A stretch of 64,000 nt of DNA, from sequence record NC_019538.1; one strand, given 5' to 3'. Each line of letters starts with the position of its first letter. Within the stretch, counting starts at the first letter, position 1. The translations under genes and the position numbers were made by a program. Under the pieces are notes generated by a model. It did not search any database, was not told the DNA's origin, and saw only the letters and a program-made list of their open reading frames with translations. This document shows positions 19,654 through 25,727 of this stretch, in pieces.

Positions 19654-20124
19654 ATGGCCGGAAATAACACATACAAAGGTCAATACTTTGTAAAGAATAG
19701 AGAAAAATATAAAGGTGATCCAAAAAAGGTTACCTACCGTAGTTCGTGGGAAAAGTATATAATGGAGATGCTGGATAATAATCCAGACGTTAGATATTGG
19801 AATAGTGAATGTATGGTTATTCCGTATTTTTCTAATGCAGATGGAAAGAAACGACGTTATTTTATGGATATGTGGATACAGTGGTCTGACGGTTCTATTT
19901 CTCTCTGGGAAGTTAAGCCTAAAAAAGAATGCTTTCCACCAGTACCACCAAAAAGGAATACATTAAAAGCAAAAAATGCTTATATTCAAGCTGTGTATAC
20001 ATGGCAAGTCAATAACGACAAATGGAAAACCACCGCAGAATTATGCAAGAAAAAAGGGTGGAGATTTAATATAATTAATGAGGACTCATTGAAAGCAATG
20101 GGTTTCAAAGGACTTACTAAATGA
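19654..20124 (+). CDS. gp4: head completion nuclease gp4 (TnsA-like)
   Basis: YKGDPKKVTYRSSWE, PYFSNADGKKRRYFMD and EVKPKKE motifs. Confidence 0.95.
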   Translation: MAGNNTYKGQYFVKNREKYKGDPKKVTYRSSWEKYIMEMLDNNPDVRYWNSECMVIPYFSNADGKKRRYFMDMWIQWSDGSISLWEVKPKKECFPPVPPKRNTLKAKNAYIQAVYTWQVNNDKWKTTAELCKKKGWRFNIINEDSLKAMGFKGLTK

Positions 20125-21119
20125 TATTCGAAATAACGGAACGTGCAGAGTCCACAACAGAAAAACGCAATAGAAAACAATGGATTGATGTTGGTGTTGA
20201 TTATATGAACGCCAAGAAAAAGAACCCAAGTCTTACTGCAAAGAAATATGCAGAGGAAAAAGGGTTGAATTATGAAACATTCAGTAGAGCTATGCGCAGG
20301 CACAGAGAAGAAATAAAGACTTATTATTCTCTGGTGAATCCAAACAAGAATAAACAACAATGGATTGAGCTTGGTGTTGATTATTTGACACAAAAAGAAA
20401 AGAGTAGCATTACTCTAAAAAATTATATTGAAGGACGGGGACTTAATAAAGAAACCACGGAGCGGGCATTCAGAAGATTCAAGCAAGATATTCTATTGGC
20501 TAAGAAATTAAAAGACGCACAAATAAGCGGAAGAAAACTATCTAAAGCCGAAAAATATCAGATGCTATTGGCTGACTTTAGAAATAAAGTAAGACAACAT
20601 GAAAAAGAGCCAGTCAAGTCTCAGAAGAAGTCAACGGAATGGTTTAACAATTTCATAAAGAAAAACGTTCGGGGACACCAAGTAACAAGACCTATTGCTG
20701 GTCGATTGTATACTTTCGCATATGATGCAAAACATAAAGCAACCCTACCATACTGGGATAAATTCCCCCTGATAGTATATCTTGGTCTTAGTGCAAAACA
20801 CAAAGGTTTGATGTTGGGTCTCAACCTCCACTATATTCCGGTAAAAGCCCGTAAAGAATTTATGGAAGAGTTGCTGAAACATGCAACCACAGAGAGGATT
20901 ACCAACCGTACATCCCTAAATATCAACTGGGGTAAGGTTAAGGGAATGAGGGGTGCAGACCATATGATCAAAGCGTATTTGCCGGGTCATATTAAGGGTC
21001 CATTAATGGAGATTAAGCCGCAGGATTGGAGTTCTGTTATTAATCTACCGACTCAACGGTTTGTATCTGGTGTTCCTCCGAAGACCTATAATACGAATTC
21101 CGTTTGGAGATCATACTAA
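20121..21119 (+). CDS. gp2: DNA end protector gp2
   Basis: YDAKHKATLPYWDKFPLI and GLNLHYIP motifs; N-terminal module duplicated. Confidence 0.95.
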   Translation: MIFEITERAESTTEKRNRKQWIDVGVDYMNAKKKNPSLTAKKYAEEKGLNYETFSRAMRRHREEIKTYYSLVNPNKNKQQWIELGVDYLTQKEKSSITLKNYIEGRGLNKETTERAFRRFKQDILLAKKLKDAQISGRKLSKAEKYQMLLADFRNKVRQHEKEPVKSQKKSTEWFNNFIKKNVRGHQVTRPIAGRLYTFAYDAKHKATLPYWDKFPLIVYLGLSAKHKGLMLGLNLHYIPVKARKEFMEELLKHATTERITNRTSLNINWGKVKGMRGADHMIKAYLPGHIKGPLMEIKPQDWSSVINLPTQRFVSGVPPKTYNTNSVWRSY

Positions 21120-22075
21120 TGAATTTAATACCACCTATTCCAACCATAGATACGTTGCAAAATGCGTTTGACCGGACACTTGAGTCCGGTCTTAATTCAC
21201 TAACAAATTTATCAATAGATGCATCAGATGAAATACCAGACCTAACTAGGTTCATGAGAAAAGTAGAAAATTCGGATTTGGCTAGACCTAACATGTTTAT
21301 TGTTCGGTTTGGGGATTTCCGAACATCTATATTCAGTGATGGTGTTTTTGACCGAGATCTTCCGATATTTCCGGACTCAAATAGTGGGATGGACGTCAAC
21401 GACAGCCTTTTCTCTGGTACAAGTTATGCTTGGCATAGAGTTCAGGATATTGCATTGGGACAAGCGCACAAAATCCTCACACCTAGCATGAAGAAGATTT
21501 TTGGTGCTTGGGATCCGTCCTTGATCCGAATCATACCGGGTGCAGGAGAGATCCTTGACGGATTTTTGGGAACTGATTACGATGTAAACCGTGATCTTGC
21601 ACTTATGGTAAAGAGTGTCGGTCTTCCTAGTTCTACTTTAGAAACGACAATCAACCGTACAGACAAACTACCTCGACATGAAGTACGGGGTAGAAACTAC
21701 GGAACCATGAGTATGACGTTTTACTGTTCCCCTTCTTACGAGGAACGTTCTTTGATGCTAACATGGCAGAATACAATTGTCAACCCAAGAAATGGACAAT
21801 TTGGATTTTATAATACGTATGCAAAGGATATTGACGTCATCACATTAGACCGTCATGGAGTTAAGCAATCCACCGTACATAATACAGGGTGTTTTCCCAT
21901 AGAGGTAGGTGAAGTCCAACTAGATTTTGAGAACAATTCTCAAGTAGCGACCTTTACCGTCACATTCGCTGTATCAACCACAGTGCATGTTCCTACTAAG
22001 GGTGAAGAGAACGGTATAGACTCTATAGAGAGTATCATAAGACGTACTACAGGCGTTGTGAAAGCCATACGTTAA
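21119..22075 (+). CDS. gp54: baseplate tail tube initiator gp54
   Basis: DLARPNMF...VKSVGLP...GCFPIEVGEVQLDFENNSQVATFTVTF tube-like fold; start at the TAATG overlap. Confidence 0.85.
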   Translation: MNLIPPIPTIDTLQNAFDRTLESGLNSLTNLSIDASDEIPDLTRFMRKVENSDLARPNMFIVRFGDFRTSIFSDGVFDRDLPIFPDSNSGMDVNDSLFSGTSYAWHRVQDIALGQAHKILTPSMKKIFGAWDPSLIRIIPGAGEILDGFLGTDYDVNRDLALMVKSVGLPSSTLETTINRTDKLPRHEVRGRNYGTMSMTFYCSPSYEERSLMLTWQNTIVNPRNGQFGFYNTYAKDIDVITLDRHGVKQSTVHNTGCFPIEVGEVQLDFENNSQVATFTVTFAVSTTVHVPTKGEENGIDSIESIIRRTTGVVKAIR

Positions 22076-22079
22076 TACT

Positions 22080-22104
22080 AAGCCATCCTACGGGGTGGCT
22101 TTTT
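22080..22104 (+). terminator. intrinsic terminator after gp54
   Basis: AAGCCATCC-TACG-GGGTGGCTTTTT. Confidence 0.8.
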
Positions 22105-22167
22105 CATATCTATAGATCTCGAACGTAGTGAGACGGCGTAGCCGCCTGTTCGCTTCGCTCACACTCT

Positions 22168-22220
22168 TTCTAATTATAGATCTTCTATATAAATACTTAT
22201 AGAGACTTTATAATTTGATT
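22168..22220 (+). repeat. 53-bp intergenic element, copy 1 (copy 2 at 52102-52154)
   Basis: 35-bp identical core TTCTAATTATAGATCTTCTATATAAATACTTATAG, 6 variable nt, then TATAATTTGATT. Confidence 0.9.
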
Positions 22221-22272
22221 ACAAGTGAAACCATCTAAGATCAAGTCTTGAAGAACATCATGTTACAATGTA

Positions 22273-22279
22273 CTAAATA
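22273..22279 (+). promoter_or_regulatory. late promoter CTAAATA for 26-29-3
   Basis: Motif upstream of the gp26 RBS. Confidence 0.65.
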
Positions 22280-22307
22280 AGTATAGATCTATAAGGGATT
22301 TTTAACT

Positions 22308-23093
22308 ATGACAAACAAAACCACGATTGACAAGAGTGTACTTCTTGCTGCTATGCAGAAAAACGTACAACAGACCAATGTGACTTTATCAGATGGTAGG
22401 AAGATCAAGGTTCGTGCTTTCTTGATGAAAGAAATGAAACTGTTGATGCTGGCTAACGAAGCTAATACTGGAATCGATGATGCAATCATTCAAATCGTAA
22501 AAAACTGTATCCTAACCGATAATGTTGATGTAGACCTTTTACCTGTGTTCGACTTAGAGGCTGTTTATCTAGCTTTGTATAAGCTATCAAAAGCCAGTCC
22601 TACTGTCCCAGTTATGTTTACTTGTGCTAACGAAATTCTTGATGAAGATGGTAATGTCCAATATGATCAATATGGTGAAATTGTTCGTTGTGGTTCTGAT
22701 ATCAAAGTAAACGTAAACTTGAATAATGCTAAATTGTCTGATGCACCAGATAACAAAATTGTTCTGAATGAGAACATGACCGTTTATATGAGATATCCTA
22801 ATATCAGCGAGGTTGAATATTTCAACGTAGAAGTTGAGTCTGACTTGTTTAACTTAATAAATCGCTGTATTGACGAAGTTCATATGGGAGATCAGGTTGT
22901 TAAGGTTGGTGTTGATATTCCGTATGAGGATATTTCGGAAATTATGGAATATGCCGATTCAGTTGCTTTGACCAAAATGGGAACATTTGTAACGGCTCTC
23001 CCCCAACATACTCTAAATATACCTGTAAAGTGTAAAAAATGTGGACACCAAGAAATTGTTACACTTAAAGGGGTAGAAAGTTTTTTCGCATAA
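22308..23093 (+). CDS. gp26: baseplate hub assembly chaperone gp26
   Basis: KIKVRAFLMKE...MRYPNI...IPVKCKKCGHQEIVTLKGVESFFA matches the gp26 family. Confidence 0.9.
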   Translation: MTNKTTIDKSVLLAAMQKNVQQTNVTLSDGRKIKVRAFLMKEMKLLMLANEANTGIDDAIIQIVKNCILTDNVDVDLLPVFDLEAVYLALYKLSKASPTVPVMFTCANEILDEDGNVQYDQYGEIVRCGSDIKVNVNLNNAKLSDAPDNKIVLNENMTVYMRYPNISEVEYFNVEVESDLFNLINRCIDEVHMGDQVVKVGVDIPYEDISEIMEYADSVALTKMGTFVTALPQHTLNIPVKCKKCGHQEIVTLKGVESFFA

Positions 23094-23257
23094 CGCTTGT
23101 TAACCATACCATATACGATCATTTTAATACGGTATATAAGCTTAGAAAAGATGGATGGAGCCATTCAGACCTTGAGGATATGACCCCCTTTGAATTTGGT
23201 GTTTATGTTCACCTCTACCTAAACGATCTTAAAGAACAGGCGAGAGAAAAGGACTAA
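23081..23257 (+). CDS. gp51: gp51-like C-terminal segment in the -1 frame of gp26; no usable start, probable frameshift extension
   Basis: Manual translation FFRITLVNHTIYDHFNTVYKLRKDGWSHSDLEDMTPFEFGVYVHLYLNDLKEQAREKD resembles the C-terminus of T4 gp51; begins at T TTT TTC. Confidence 0.75.
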   Translation, partial: FFRITLVNHTIYDHFNTVYKLRKDGWSHSDLEDMTPFEFGVYVHLYLNDLKEQAREKD

Positions 23258-25120
23258 GTGATGATTGACAAGCAGAAACAGAACGAACTTGATAAATCGG
23301 TTCGAGATGTCACGGATGCTATGGATATTGTTTCTGATTCGATGCTTAAGTTGGACGACAAGACAGAAAAGTTGTCCAACTCAACAAAAGACCTTACCGC
23401 GTCTTATGATATTACCTCTGATTCCAGTCTGGAAGTCGCACAAGAACAAGAAAAATTAGCGAACCAGATAAAAGGTGCAAGAAAGGATAATAAGCGTAGT
23501 AATAAGGTTGAAAACGAATTAGTTTCAGCTAGACGAAAGCAACTGGAAGACATTTTAAATAATAAACAACCCCTAGTGGATTATAGCCAAGGTGTAAAAA
23601 GTCAGAACCCGGAACAGGGGGAAACTGCCAAACCTATGCAGGAAGACACTAGGGAGACTTTGAAAGAATTTATACAGCGCGAAGTTGGTGATCGCCGCGA
23701 ATTTGTGGAAAATTTCAAAGAAGAAAATCAAAAAACTGGTAAATTTGTTCGAGAGATAGCAAAAAAAGCTAATATAGTTGATCGAATGAAGAAATCAGAA
23801 ACATCAGCAACAGCGAAAATACTTGGTCATACCATGTCCGCTGGTATCGGTATGGTTACTGGAACCATAAACGATTTGTTATCAACTATTCCCGGTTATA
23901 ATCAGGCCGCTAATGCAACGAAGTTTGTTGGTGGGTCTATTATTGATGCACATAACGCACGTAAGGAAAAGAAATTAGATGCAAAAGCGAATGCGGCTTA
24001 TGAAGAGAAGAAGGCTGATGCTACTTCTAGATTCCAACAGATCCCACAAAACAAACCAGAAGACAAAGTAAAAACAGATAGAAATAACCAAGAGCAAAAG
24101 AAAGAAAGACAAGAAAATGGAAGAGAACGAGAGAATAACGAAAAGCGTCATAAAAGCTTAATCGATGTTCTTAAAGGTATCCAGATGTCCATGTTGATCG
24201 GTAAACTGATTGGTGGTGTTGGATTTGTTCTTAGTGGTCTTGTTTCTGGTATCAGTGTTCTATCTGGTGCAGTTCTCGGTTTGGCCCCTATGATTGCGGG
24301 TGCCCTATCTGCTGCTGTTGGTGGTTTAATTGCTAAGTTTTCGGGGTTGTTTGATAAGATACCGGGATTGGGAAGTAAGACCCCAACACCATCGTCTGGT
24401 GGAGTTAATCCAAACGATGTGTCTAAGGATCCTAAGAAGTCTCCGAAAACTACACAGCCGGATGGAAAGAAGCCACCAACCCCAGAACCAAGACCGGGAC
24501 AACCAGCAAAAATAGAGACACCTAAGACAAAGACTCCTACCCCTAAAGGGAAAGCTGGTATTTTGTCAAAGGCTGCGGATCTTGGTAAAAAAGGTTGGTC
24601 TGTTGCTACTGATGCTGCAAAATCAGCCTCTAAATTTATACCAAAAAGCGCACTAACTGGTGCCGGTATGGCGGTACGTGTCGCTGGTAGAGCAATTCCT
24701 TTTGTTGGTGCTGGCTTGATGGCTTATGAGTTGTATAACTTCGCCAAAGAGAATCCAGAGCTGTTAGATAAGGGTGTTGATGCTGCGAAGGGTGCTTGGG
24801 AAAGTCTTACCGGATCATTGTTTGGAAAAGCTAATGCTAGTGAAGCTCAACCGGAATCTAAATTAGGGAATGAAATTAAGGCTGGTGAAAATGAGCCTGT
24901 ATTTAAAACCCTTGAGAAAAGAAACCAAGAGGTTGAAGAATTCCGAGCTAAACAACAACGTGAAAAGGAAGAACGAGACGCACGACGTCAAGAAGGTGCG
25001 TTAATGGCTGCTGTAAATAATACCACATATAACAGTATGAATTCCGTTCTACCGTCTGGTTTTGGTGAATTTAGACCAGACCAACCACAATATTCATATG
25101 GGGTTCAACCGTCAACATGA
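23258..25120 (+). CDS. gp29: tape measure / baseplate hub protein gp29
   Basis: 620 aa helical protein with a hydrophobic Gly-rich segment and RAIPFVGAGL motif; follows 26/51. Confidence 0.75.
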   Translation: MMIDKQKQNELDKSVRDVTDAMDIVSDSMLKLDDKTEKLSNSTKDLTASYDITSDSSLEVAQEQEKLANQIKGARKDNKRSNKVENELVSARRKQLEDILNNKQPLVDYSQGVKSQNPEQGETAKPMQEDTRETLKEFIQREVGDRREFVENFKEENQKTGKFVREIAKKANIVDRMKKSETSATAKILGHTMSAGIGMVTGTINDLLSTIPGYNQAANATKFVGGSIIDAHNARKEKKLDAKANAAYEEKKADATSRFQQIPQNKPEDKVKTDRNNQEQKKERQENGRERENNEKRHKSLIDVLKGIQMSMLIGKLIGGVGFVLSGLVSGISVLSGAVLGLAPMIAGALSAAVGGLIAKFSGLFDKIPGLGSKTPTPSSGGVNPNDVSKDPKKSPKTTQPDGKKPPTPEPRPGQPAKIETPKTKTPTPKGKAGILSKAADLGKKGWSVATDAAKSASKFIPKSALTGAGMAVRVAGRAIPFVGAGLMAYELYNFAKENPELLDKGVDAAKGAWESLTGSLFGKANASEAQPESKLGNEIKAGENEPVFKTLEKRNQEVEEFRAKQQREKEERDARRQEGALMAAVNNTTYNSMNSVLPSGFGEFRPDQPQYSYGVQPST

Positions 25121-25674
25121 TACATAATCAAGCACACATAACAAACATGCGTCTGGAAATCCCAGACGCAAACACAACAGCTAACTTTGTTACATCAGCT
25201 CAATCCGTTGTACTTCCAACTATGGAAATGGATATAACAAGGGTTTCGATAAATCAGATGACGTCCGGACTTATGCCGGGTTCGAAGATCATTTACGAAC
25301 CATTTAGGATTAGATTTTTGATTGATGAAAATTTCGAATCTTATAAAGAGTTATATCAATGGATGATCTCTGTTACTGATAGTAGAACTTTCAATTCCAC
25401 CGCCCATCTACCGGGGGCTAGACCTAGATCTATTTTGGTTCATATTCTAGACAACTCAAAAAAGAATATAGTGTTGACTTTCAAGTTTCACGACCCGTTC
25501 CCAAGTTCTTTGGACGATATAGAATTGTCCTATGTTGATGATGGAAACCCAGCCCTTATAGGTAATGTAACGTTTAGTTACTCATCTATGAGTGTTGTTG
25601 GTGTCAACGATTTGGAAATTCTACCAAAACAAAACCCGGTCGGTATCGGTGCAGGGCACCCATTCCAAAAGTAA
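25117..25674 (+). CDS. gp3: tail tube terminator gp3
   Basis: MIHNQAHITN...YEPFRIRFLIDENFESYKELYQWM...LHILDNS-like motif matches gp3. Confidence 0.92.
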   Translation: MIHNQAHITNMRLEIPDANTTANFVTSAQSVVLPTMEMDITRVSINQMTSGLMPGSKIIYEPFRIRFLIDENFESYKELYQWMISVTDSRTFNSTAHLPGARPRSILVHILDNSKKNIVLTFKFHDPFPSSLDDIELSYVDDGNPALIGNVTFSYSSMSVVGVNDLEILPKQNPVGIGAGHPFQK

Positions 25675-25727
25675 AATCTAAAGGTACTTCGTCTTGGGGT
25701 ATAATAAACAAAAAGATGAGGTACTAT

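What the first reader, a model, noticed from the sequence alone, without database searches (positions are those of the whole stretch)
23066..23260. Candidate programmed -1 frameshift making gp26 and a gp51-like fusion from one locus (lambda G/GT-like chaperone switch in a T4-like phage)
Seen: gp26 ends GAA AGT TTT TTC GCA TAA, containing an X XXY YYZ-type slippery heptamer T TTT TTC (23081-23087) one codon before the stop. The -1 frame is open from 23069 to TAA 23255-23257 and reads FFRITLVNHTIYDHFNTVYKLRKDGWSHSDLEDMTPFEFGVYVHLYLNDLKEQAREKD. It has no ATG/GTG/TTG until a Met 25 codons from its end, and it stops immediately before the tape measure gene. An SD-like AAGGGG sits about 7 nt upstream of the slip site. 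Knowledge: T4 gp51 is a gp26-like protein with an extra C-terminal ~55 aa resembling this peptide (recalled, not aligned). Long-tailed phages make G and GT tail chaperones by a -1 frameshift just upstream of the tape measure gene. Inference: this phage makes gp26 and gp26-51 in a fixed ratio, and T4's separate genes 26 and 51 would be a duplicated, hard-wired version. I am not aware of this being described for T4-like phages.
Basis: partly seen in the sequence, partly recalled or inferred. Interest (0 to 1): 0.88.

Follow-up and report, generated by a model that had tools for sequence, protein, structure and literature searches.

The report
Unannotated gp26 frameshift, already published
Aeromonas phage CC2 almost certainly makes a short and a long form of its gp26 tail/baseplate assembly chaperone by a -1 ribosomal slip on T TTT TTC; the signal is real and strikingly conserved, but it was already described for T4-like phages in 2022, so only the database annotation is missing.

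Summary
The window is Aeromonas phage CC2 (100% identity). Gene 26 (22308-23093) ends AGT TTT TTC GCA TAA, with T TTT TTC (23081-23087) in X XXY YYZ register one codon before the stop. The -1 frame then runs 56 codons to TAA 23255-23257 with no start codon for 31 codons, ending next to a 620-aa tape-measure-like gene.

It is not chance. The same heptamer, in the same register, occurs in 13/13 annotated loci from diverse lineages and 84/84 viral-contig loci. The start-less part of the -1 ORF shows coding periodicity. T4 gp51 is colinear with gp26 body plus this extension. T4-type phages, which carry separate genes 26 and 51, have lost the heptamer (0 of 6 lineages).

The best explanation is a programmed -1 ribosomal frameshift making gp26 and a roughly 316-aa gp51-like long form. 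Transcriptional slippage on the T6 run and separate initiation are weaker rivals. The SD-like element is not specific to frameshifting lineages, and CC2 has no detectable downstream RNA structure.

The idea is not new. [quoted passage not shown] Citing papers summarise both the poly-T frameshift signal and the separate short and long genes of some T4-like phages. I could not read that paper itself. Verdict: real, well supported, already known; CC2 and its relatives lack the annotation.

The parts
21119..22075 (+). gp54-type baseplate-tail tube initiator (tail-tube family), the upstream neighbour
   Evidence: phrog_45 'tail tube' E=2.2e-48. Annotated gp54 in the CC2 records. The ORF listing gives an alternative TTG start at 21104.
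22308..23093 (+). gene 26, zero-frame product gp26 (261 aa), the short form (TAC-N-like baseplate hub assembly chaperone)
   Evidence: PF12322 E=2.5e-54 and phrog_150 E=2.9e-58. The AF2 model has pLDDT 85.9 and matches the gp26/gp51 family in BFVD.
23067..23073 (+). purine-rich/G-run (AAAGGGG), SD-like, 7 nt upstream of the slip site; a stimulatory role is not supported as specific
   Evidence: Present. It encodes the conserved K-G-V/L motif, and the third position of the Gly codon varies. The same kind of sequence occurs in non-frameshifting T4-type gp26 genes.
23081..23087 (+). slippery heptamer T TTT TTC in X XXY YYZ register
   Evidence: Invariant in 13/13 diverse annotated loci and 84/84 IMG/VR loci. 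All seven columns have zero entropy although three are third-codon positions. Absent from 6/6 T4-type lineages.
23091..23093 (+). zero-frame stop of gene 26, one sense codon after the heptamer (conserved spacing)
   Evidence: The spacing is one codon in 103 of 104 heptamer-bearing loci examined and two codons in ORM_20.
23087..23257 (+). -1 frame extension ORF (56 codons plus TAA), gp51-tail-like 'C' part of the long form; no start codon in its first 31 codons
   Evidence: phrog_634 E=1.7e-11. tblastn finds it next to gp26 in 38 phage records. It aligns with the T4 gp51 C-terminal tail. Variability peaks at the -1-frame third codon position in the start-less region. It is the single copy in the window. 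It is unannotated in both CC2 records.
23258..25120 (+). 620-aa tape-measure-like protein (gp29 analogue, inferred); the annotated start is ATG 23261
   Evidence: phrog_11300, function unknown. BLASTP to T4 gp29 is weak, E=0.012. The positional counterpart in ValKK3 hits TMP phrog_58 at 1.6e-6, and the Cr30 counterpart is annotated TMP. Its size is similar to T4 gp29 (590 aa).
25117..25674 (+). gp3-type tail completion / sheath stabiliser protein, the downstream neighbour
   Evidence: Annotated gp3; phrog_45 E=7.8e-35 and PF06841.

Best explanation
Gene 26 of phage CC2 is decoded in two ways. Most ribosomes read it to the TAA at 23091 and make the 261-aa gp26. A minority slip back one base on T TTT TTC (23081-23087): the two tRNA-Phe re-pair from TTT-TTC to TTT-TTT. 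These ribosomes continue in the -1 frame for 56 more codons to TAA 23255 and make a long form of about 316 aa. Its added tail is homologous to the C-terminal tail of T4 gp51. The two forms would act as the short (TAC-N) and long (TAC-NC) tail/baseplate-hub assembly chaperones for the tape-measure-like protein encoded immediately downstream. This is analogous to lambda gpG/gpGT. T4 and its close relatives have replaced the recoding with two separate genes, 26 (short) and 51 (long, in frame). Shown here: the signal, its conservation, coding constraint in the start-less -1 region, and homology to gp51. Inferred: that the slip is ribosomal, its efficiency, and the chaperone function.
For: (1) The heptamer is in the correct register. 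(2) It is invariant across Straboviridae, Kyanoviridae, Cr30, pf16, Moby, Xanthomonas X1, ORM_20 and metagenomic relatives: 13/13, 84/84. The preceding codon switches between AGT, TCT, GCT, GAT and AAT but always ends in T, and the first Phe codon is always TTT. By contrast the third base of the following codon varies freely. (3) The base after the heptamer is G in 83/83 TTTTTTC loci although the zero-frame residue varies (A/D/G/E/V). This fits a constraint from the first -1 codon, CGN = Arg. (4) Codon-position entropy in the -1 frame upstream of any ATG is 0.50/0.35/1.20, matching the gp26 body at 0.51/0.23/1.33. (5) T4 gp51 is colinear with body plus extension, and all 13 aligned family members fall in PF12322. 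(6) As a natural control, 6 T4-type lineages with separate 26 and 51 keep the F-F residues but encode them as GAA/GAG TTC TTY or G TTT TTT, with no X XXY YYZ site. Counting lineages gives 18/18 versus 0/6, Fisher exact about 7e-6 (my hand calculation). (7) There is only one gp26-like body and one extension in the window and one place per CC2 genome record by tblastn, so the long form has no other source. (8) Literature: poly-T -1 frameshift signals in TAC-N genes of T4-like phages, and separate short and long genes in some T4-like phages, are attributed to Vladimirov et al. 2022. An A-site TTC-to-TTT slip has a precedent in T7 gene 10 (cited).
Against: There is no protein, ribosome-profiling or transcript evidence for CC2 or any relative in the material I could read. 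CC2 has no detectable downstream stimulatory structure (z = 0.03 and -0.2), and the SD-like element is not specific, so no stimulator is identified apart from the nearby stop. The F-F residues are themselves conserved, so part of the T-run is forced by the protein. [quoted passage not shown] Some lineages have an ATG at -1 codon 3 that overlaps the gp26 stop, which allows separate initiation there.
Confidence: 0.75

Rival explanations
1. Transcriptional slippage. RNA polymerase occasionally adds one extra U on the T6 run, so a fraction of mRNAs encode the long form in a single frame. The protein products would be identical to those of ribosomal frameshifting.
For: A conserved homopolymeric T run (six T, seven in Cr30 and pf16). 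No stimulatory RNA structure in CC2. The title of Vladimirov et al. [quoted passage not shown]
Against: From established knowledge, bacterial RNA polymerase slips appreciably only on runs of about 8-9 or more A/T, and six is short. Selection for slippage should favour longer runs, yet the run is capped at exactly six by a C in 83/84 IMG/VR loci and most others. The conserved feature is the tandem-slippage register, including the T that precedes the two Phe codons.
Confidence: 0.1
2. Separate translation of the small ORF. The extension is made as a free peptide of about 55 aa, by non-canonical initiation or by termination-reinitiation at the gp26 stop, and is not fused to gp26.
For: In ValKK3, Cr30, Moby and VP-1 an ATG sits at -1 codon 3, overlapping the gp26 stop (TAATG/TGATG), and PX29 has TTG at codon 2. 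Annotators have called such small ORFs. T4 gene 26 has a second annotated product, 26', from internal initiation.
Against: CC2, phage 65, Aeh1, phiAS5, Ahp1, Ci1 and most cyanophage loci have no start codon there: CC2 has ACG at that position, and the first ATG lies at codon 19-33. The peptide is nevertheless conserved and under coding constraint from its first codon. This model does not explain the invariant heptamer. The in-frame fusion in T4 gp51 shows that the extension functions attached to a gp26-like body.
Confidence: 0.08
3. Artefact or decay. Either a homopolymer sequencing error splits one long ORF, or the -1 ORF is a chance or decaying remnant.
For: Homopolymer runs are error-prone in some sequencing chemistries. 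The stretch is unannotated in CC2.
Against: Exactly six T in independently sequenced genomes from different laboratories. The same two-frame geometry occurs in about 100 loci, including metagenomes. There is strong purifying selection in the -1 frame.
Confidence: 0.01

Closest known systems
TAC-N / TAC-NC genes of T4-like phages (Vladimirov, Gautam & Davidson, Virology 2022; 566:9-15)
   Same: This appears to be the same system: a gp26-family short form, a long form with a gp51-type tail, and a poly-T -1 shift signal at the 3' end of the short gene. Some T4-like phages carry separate short and fused long genes instead (as summarised).
   Different: I know of no biological difference. The CC2 locus, and those of all relatives I inspected, simply lack the joined annotation. 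I could not read the primary paper, so I cannot say whether CC2 or the Emmerichvirinae were in its data set or which mechanism it favours for them.
T4 gp26 and gp51 (baseplate hub assembly proteins)
   Same: The CC2 gp26 body falls in PF12322 and phrog_150 with both T4 proteins. The CC2 -1 peptide falls in phrog_634 with the T4 gp51 tail, and the order is colinear.
   Different: T4 has two divergently transcribed genes, no slippery heptamer and no overlapping -1 ORF, and gene 26 is followed by gene 25. Pairwise BLASTP between the CC2 and T4 proteins is not significant, so the link holds only at profile level.
Lambda gpG/gpGT and the conserved tail-assembly frameshift of long-tailed phages (Levin et al. 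1993; Xu, Hendrix & Duda 2004)
   Same: A -1 shift on an X XXY YYZ heptamer near the 3' end of a gene lying between a tube-family gene and the tape-measure(-like) gene. The extension has no start codon, and no strong stimulatory structure is present. The lambda products are made at 30:1 and are absent from virions.
   Different: The slippery sequence differs: T TTT TTC here, G GGA AAG in lambda (my knowledge). gp26 is about twice the size of classical TACs and carries a four-Cys zinc-ribbon-like motif. No significant sequence or fold match to TAC families was found.
T7 gene 10A/10B -1 frameshift
   Same: A T-rich shift site ending TTTTC, with tRNA-Phe slipping in the A site from TTC to TTT in a phage structural gene (cited; otherwise my knowledge).
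   Different: It concerns a capsid protein, not a chaperone. The heptamer is G GTT TTC rather than T TTT TTC, and the T7 site depends on distant downstream sequence (my knowledge).
E. coli dnaX -1 frameshift
   Same: A bacterial -1 frameshift producing two forms of one protein.
   Different: dnaX uses A AAA AAG with an SD-like stimulator about 10 nt upstream and a strong downstream hairpin (my knowledge). In CC2 the SD-like stretch is explained by coding and the hairpin is absent.

Membership tests
T4 gp26/gp51 family (Pfam PF12322 T4_baseplate; PHROG 150 + PHROG 634) | Body matches the gp26-family profile | tested here: met
   PF12322 E=2.5e-54 over residues 25-261; phrog_150 E=2.9e-58. The AF2 model matches family members in BFVD, best E=1.3e-28.
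T4 gp26/gp51 family (Pfam PF12322 T4_baseplate; PHROG 150 + PHROG 634) | Long form carries the gp51-type C-terminal tail, colinear with the body | tested here: met
   The -1 peptide hits phrog_634 positions 58-112 (E=1.7e-11), and T4 gp51 residues 147-246 hit positions 2-103. The alignment is colinear from the first residue after the slip site. Direct BLASTP is not significant.
Frameshifted tail assembly chaperone pair (lambda G/GT type; TAC-N/TAC-NC) | Two overlapping ORFs, the second in the -1 frame, lacking its own start and under coding constraint | tested here: met
   no start codon for 31 codons in CC2, and third-position variability in the -1 frame.
Frameshifted tail assembly chaperone pair (lambda G/GT type; TAC-N/TAC-NC) | [quoted passage not shown] | tested here: met
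   T TTT TTY in 13/13 and 84/84 loci; zero entropy at all 7 positions; lost in 6/6 two-gene lineages.
Frameshifted tail assembly chaperone pair (lambda G/GT type; TAC-N/TAC-NC) | Position between a tail-tube-family gene and the tape measure gene | tested here: inconclusive
   The upstream neighbour is gp54, of the tail-tube family (phrog_45, 2.2e-48). The downstream 620-aa protein is tape-measure-like only by position, size and weak similarity.
Frameshifted tail assembly chaperone pair (lambda G/GT type; TAC-N/TAC-NC) | Sequence or fold membership in a recognised TAC family | tested here: inconclusive
   No Pfam Phage_TAC hit for CC2 gp26, and one of 13 family members hits Phage_TAC_3 at E=0.045. 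No PDB hit by sequence. Foldseek against PDB gives nothing at E<=1e-3, though the highest-probability weak hits are the two solved TACs, HK97 2ob9 (prob 0.28) and YqbN 3klu (prob 0.23).
Frameshifted tail assembly chaperone pair (lambda G/GT type; TAC-N/TAC-NC) | Two proteins actually made in a fixed ratio, binding the tape measure and tube proteins, and absent from virions | not testable with these tools
   This requires proteomics, ribosome profiling or immunoblots of infected cells, plus interaction or structural data.

The most novel reading that the evidence does not exclude
The recoding signal is a self-contained, structure-independent module (T TTT TTC, then G, then two more bases, then the stop). 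In it the zero-frame stop one codon downstream, rather than an RNA hairpin or an SD-like element, would be the stimulator. The module has been kept for a very long time across several phage families. In lineages with an ATG at -1 codon 3, a third product (a free tail peptide) would also be made. This goes beyond what the citing papers attribute to the 2022 study, but I could not check the study itself.
Probability: 0.2. Interest if true: 0.45.

Novelty: already known. Interest (0 to 1): 0.25.

Why it matters
This answers a long-standing question: where the tail assembly chaperones of T4-type phages are, and why T4 seemed to lack the frameshift that is otherwise universal in long-tailed phages. 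Gene 26 and its -1 extension fill that role, and T4's genes 26 and 51 are a hard-wired version. That answer has been in the literature since 2022. What remains useful here is practical. CC2 and every relative I inspected lack the joined CDS, or carry spurious short ORFs in its place. The data here give a clean rule for finding the site: gp26 ending xxT TTT TTY plus one codon plus stop, followed by a -1 ORF of 55-70 codons. They also give a natural control set (the Tevenvirinae) for annotation pipelines and frameshift predictors.

Tried and rejected
- **Pairwise BLASTP.** T4 gp51 against CC2 gp26 and against the -1 peptide was not significant. Only profile searches and multiple alignment show the relation.
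- **Downstream stimulatory structure in CC2.** The MFE fold is no better than shuffles (z 0.03 and -0.2). Other lineages do show stable folds, but there is no common structure, so I did not build a covariance model. Pseudoknots were not tested.
- **SD-like stimulator.** Rejected as specific evidence, because it is equally present in non-frameshifting T4-type genes.
- **TAC membership.** Sequence searches against PDB, NCBIfam and Pfam gave nothing significant. By fold the result is inconclusive.
- **Tape measure identity.** Pfam and NCBIfam gave nothing useful for the 620-aa protein, and the similarity to T4 gp29 is weak.
- **Primary paper.** Vladimirov et al. 2022 is not held, so I relied on citing papers.
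- **Homopolymer sequencing error.** Rejected.
Full report
**Identity of the window.** The region 21000-25700 is 100% identical to Aeromonas phage CC2 (JX123262 / NC_019538; Straboviridae, Emmerichvirinae, Ceceduovirus) and 95-97% identical to about a dozen related Aeromonas phages. The local gene order is gp48(-), gp4, gp2, gp54, gp26, an unannotated 164-nt stretch, a 620-aa 'hypothetical protein', gp3 and dNMP kinase.

**Check of the observation.**
- ORF 22308-23093 (261 aa; PF12322 E=2.5e-54; phrog_150 E=2.9e-58) ends AGT TTT TTC GCA TAA.
- T TTT TTC lies at 23081-23087 in X XXY YYZ register, one sense codon before the stop.
- The -1 frame is open from 23069 to TAA 23255-23257. After the heptamer it encodes 56 residues beginning R-I-T-L-V-N, and its first possible start codon is the Met at codon 32.
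- AAAGGGG lies 7 nt upstream of the heptamer.
- The next ORF begins at GTG 23258 / ATG 23261.
- From base composition, 56 open codons has P about 0.025. The peptide hits PHROG 634, 'baseplate hub assembly catalyst', at E=1.7e-11.
- Neither CC2 record annotates anything between gp26 and the 620-aa gene.

**Conservation of the arrangement.** tblastn with the -1 peptide finds it next to gp26 in 38 phage records. I read the junction in loci from many lineages:
- CC2, phage 65, Aeh1, phiAS5, PX29, Ahp1, Citrobacter phage Ci1 and Synechococcus phage S-H38;
- ValKK3, Syn33, Caulobacter phage Cr30, Pseudomonas phage pf16 and Stenotrophomonas phage Moby;
- Xanthomonas phage X1 and Ochrobactrum phage ORM_20;
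- two metagenomic relatives;
- 84 IMG/VR loci, retrieved with peptide patterns that did not include the C-terminus.

Every one of these has T TTT TTY in the same register. The zero-frame stop follows one codon later everywhere except ORM_20, where it follows two codons later. The codon before the two Phe codons changes between AGT, TCT, GCT, GAT and AAT but always ends in T. The first Phe codon is always TTT. The third base of the codon after the heptamer varies freely. In the cyanophage set all seven heptamer columns have zero entropy, whereas ordinary third positions in gp26 average 1.33 bits. The base after TTTTTTC is G in 83/83 loci although the zero-frame residue there varies, which fits a constraint from the first -1 codon, CGN.

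**Coding constraint in the start-less region.** After the gp26 stop, and upstream of any ATG, column entropy by -1-frame codon position is 0.50/0.35/1.20 in 79 cyanophage-type loci and 0.81/0.57/1.20 in the Aeromonas/Citrobacter group. This is the same pattern as in the gp26 body. The -1 peptides align without gaps from their first residue. So this stretch is translated in the -1 frame from the slip site onward, although it has no start codon in CC2 and most other lineages.

**Relation to T4.** In T4, gene 26 (208 aa) and gene 51 (249 aa) are divergently transcribed, and 51 is followed by 27, 28 and 29.
- T4 gp51 matches the gp26-family profile phrog_150 end to end (positions 13-280 of 282, E=2.6e-84). 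T4 gp26 stops at position 235.
- T4 gp51 residues 147-246 also match PHROG 634.
- All 13 aligned proteins, including both T4 proteins, hit PF12322.
- In the alignment, gp26 proteins end with G-[LIV]-x-x-F-F plus one residue. T4 gp51 continues in frame past that point with K-L-L-V-N..., which aligns with the R-L-T-L-V-N... start of the -1 peptides.

T4 gp51 is therefore the single-frame equivalent of what a -1 shift at the heptamer would produce in CC2. Pairwise BLASTP does not see this; it is a profile-level relation.

**Natural control.** In T4 and five other T4-type lineages (X20, vB_KpnM_5N, STML-198, SonariX, and an IMG/VR contig 58% identical to T4 gp26), gene 26 is followed by gene 25. 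Where the record is annotated, a separate long gp51-type CDS is present. In these lineages the F-F residues are kept but are encoded as GAA/GAG TTC TTY or G TTT TTT, so no X XXY YYZ site exists. Counting lineages gives 18/18 with the -1 ORF carrying the heptamer, against 0/6 of the two-gene type (Fisher exact about 7e-6, my hand calculation). The heptamer is thus tied to the overlapping -1 ORF and not merely to the protein motif.

**Possible stimulators.** The SD-like purine-plus-GG stretch encodes the conserved [K/R/E]-G-[L/V] motif. It also occurs in T4-type genes that do not frameshift, for example AGA GGC and AAG GGG. It therefore cannot be counted as evidence. Downstream of the site, CC2, phage 65 and the cyanophages fold no better than shuffled sequence (z from -0.5 to +1.1). 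ValKK3, Cr30, pf16, Moby and Aeh1 show stable folds (z from -2.5 to -4.0), but these do not share a common structure. The only invariant context is the stop one codon downstream.

**Mechanism and rivals.** I consider a -1 ribosomal tandem slip most likely (0.75).
- Transcriptional slippage would give the same protein. It is disfavoured because six T is short for bacterial RNA polymerase (established knowledge), and because the run is capped by C in almost all loci instead of being lengthened (0.10).
- Separate initiation is conceivable where an ATG overlaps the gp26 stop (ValKK3, Cr30, Moby, VP-1). It does not explain CC2, which has ACG at that position, nor the invariant heptamer (0.08).
- Sequencing error is excluded by six T in independently sequenced genomes.

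The window holds only one gp26-like body and one extension, and tblastn finds one place per CC2 record. The long form therefore has no other source.

**Function.** gp26 gives a confident AF2 model (pLDDT 85.9, pTM 0.75). It matches gp26/gp51-family models in many myoviruses (40 hits at E<=1e-3). Against solved structures nothing is significant; the highest-probability weak hits are the two solved tail assembly chaperones, HK97 2ob9 and YqbN 3klu. The chaperone assignment therefore rests on T4 genetics (gp26 and gp51 are hub assembly factors; annotation), on synteny, and on the 2022 paper, not on my fold test. The 620-aa downstream protein is tape-measure-like by position, size and weak similarity only.

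[quoted passage not shown] It cites Vladimirov, Gautam & Davidson, Virology 2022. [quoted passage not shown] The 2016 recoding review does not mention T4-type phages in this context. The 2022 paper is not in the library, so I know it only through its title and these summaries. The finding is a correct rediscovery and an annotation gap, not a new phenomenon.

Noticed in passing
L010:4303-4929 (T4 gene 26) and L107-L110, L105: T4-type gp26 proteins end F-F-[K/E/R]-x-x-stop (for example K-L-L or E-L-L). This resembles the first residues of the extension (K-L-L-V-N in T4 gp51, R-L-T-L-V-N in the -1 peptides). It suggests that T4 gene 26 descends from an in-frame long-form copy truncated three codons after F-F, and not from the short frame of a frameshifting gene.
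   Followed up: partly
L011:3320-3410, L013:3206-3296, L014:3155-3245, L015:3200-3290, L004:1502-1592: Stable predicted RNA folds (z from -2.5 to -4.0) start a few bases after the slip site in ValKK3, Cr30, pf16, Moby and Aeh1, but not in CC2, phage 65 or the cyanophages. In the Aeh1/phiAS5/PX29/Ahp1 group a CCCUC...GAGGG long-range pairing recurs. No covariation test was done.
   Followed up: partly
L011:3325, L013:3211, L015:3205, L113:2475: In ValKK3, Cr30, Moby and Vibrio phage VP-1 an ATG sits at -1 codon 3, overlapping the gp26 stop (TAATG/TGATG). A free small protein could therefore be made in addition to, or instead of, the fused form. PX29 has TTG at codon 2, and RefSeq uses it as the start.
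   Followed up: partly
L113 (Vibrio phage VP-1, Ackermannviridae), gp26 end at 2475: The gp26 homologue ends CAC GTT TTT CGC TAA. This is a GTTTTT-type site, not T TTT TTY, and is followed by a 60-codon -1 ORF. It resembles the GTTTTT motif reported for Vandenendeviridae and Andersonviridae TAC genes (PMC12846349).
   Followed up: no
L112 (Ochrobactrum phage ORM_20), gp26 end at 2484: This is the only locus where the zero-frame stop lies two codons, not one, after the heptamer.
   Followed up: no
window 23258-25120: The 620-aa 'hypothetical protein' is probably the tape measure (gp29 analogue). It is low-complexity, with a Gly/Ala-rich hydrophobic centre and a Pro/Lys/Thr-rich stretch. The start is ambiguous (GTG 23258 or ATG 23261), and an AAGGA lies inside the end of the -1 ORF. 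In 9 of the 13 annotated loci read, the -1 ORF stop overlaps the start of the next gene (ATGA or TAATG).
   Followed up: partly
window 20121-21119: The gp2 DNA end protector (332 aa) has an N-terminal extension of about 135 residues with two repeats matching an HTH DNA-binding PHROG (phrog_32288, 2 stretches), ahead of the gp2 domain (phrog_429).
   Followed up: no
window 22308-23093 (gp26 protein): Four invariant cysteines (C106, C128, C242, C245), with weak zinc-ribbon Pfam hits, suggest a zinc-binding site in the gp26 body. Classical small TACs have no such feature.
   Followed up: no
L001 and L002 (CC2 records), L116 (AP1 record): Annotation oddities. In the AP1 record the tape-measure-like gene is annotated as two CDSs (one break, kind not determined). 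AP1 also holds the gp26 region and the rest of this block at distant places in a 254-kb record.
   Followed up: no
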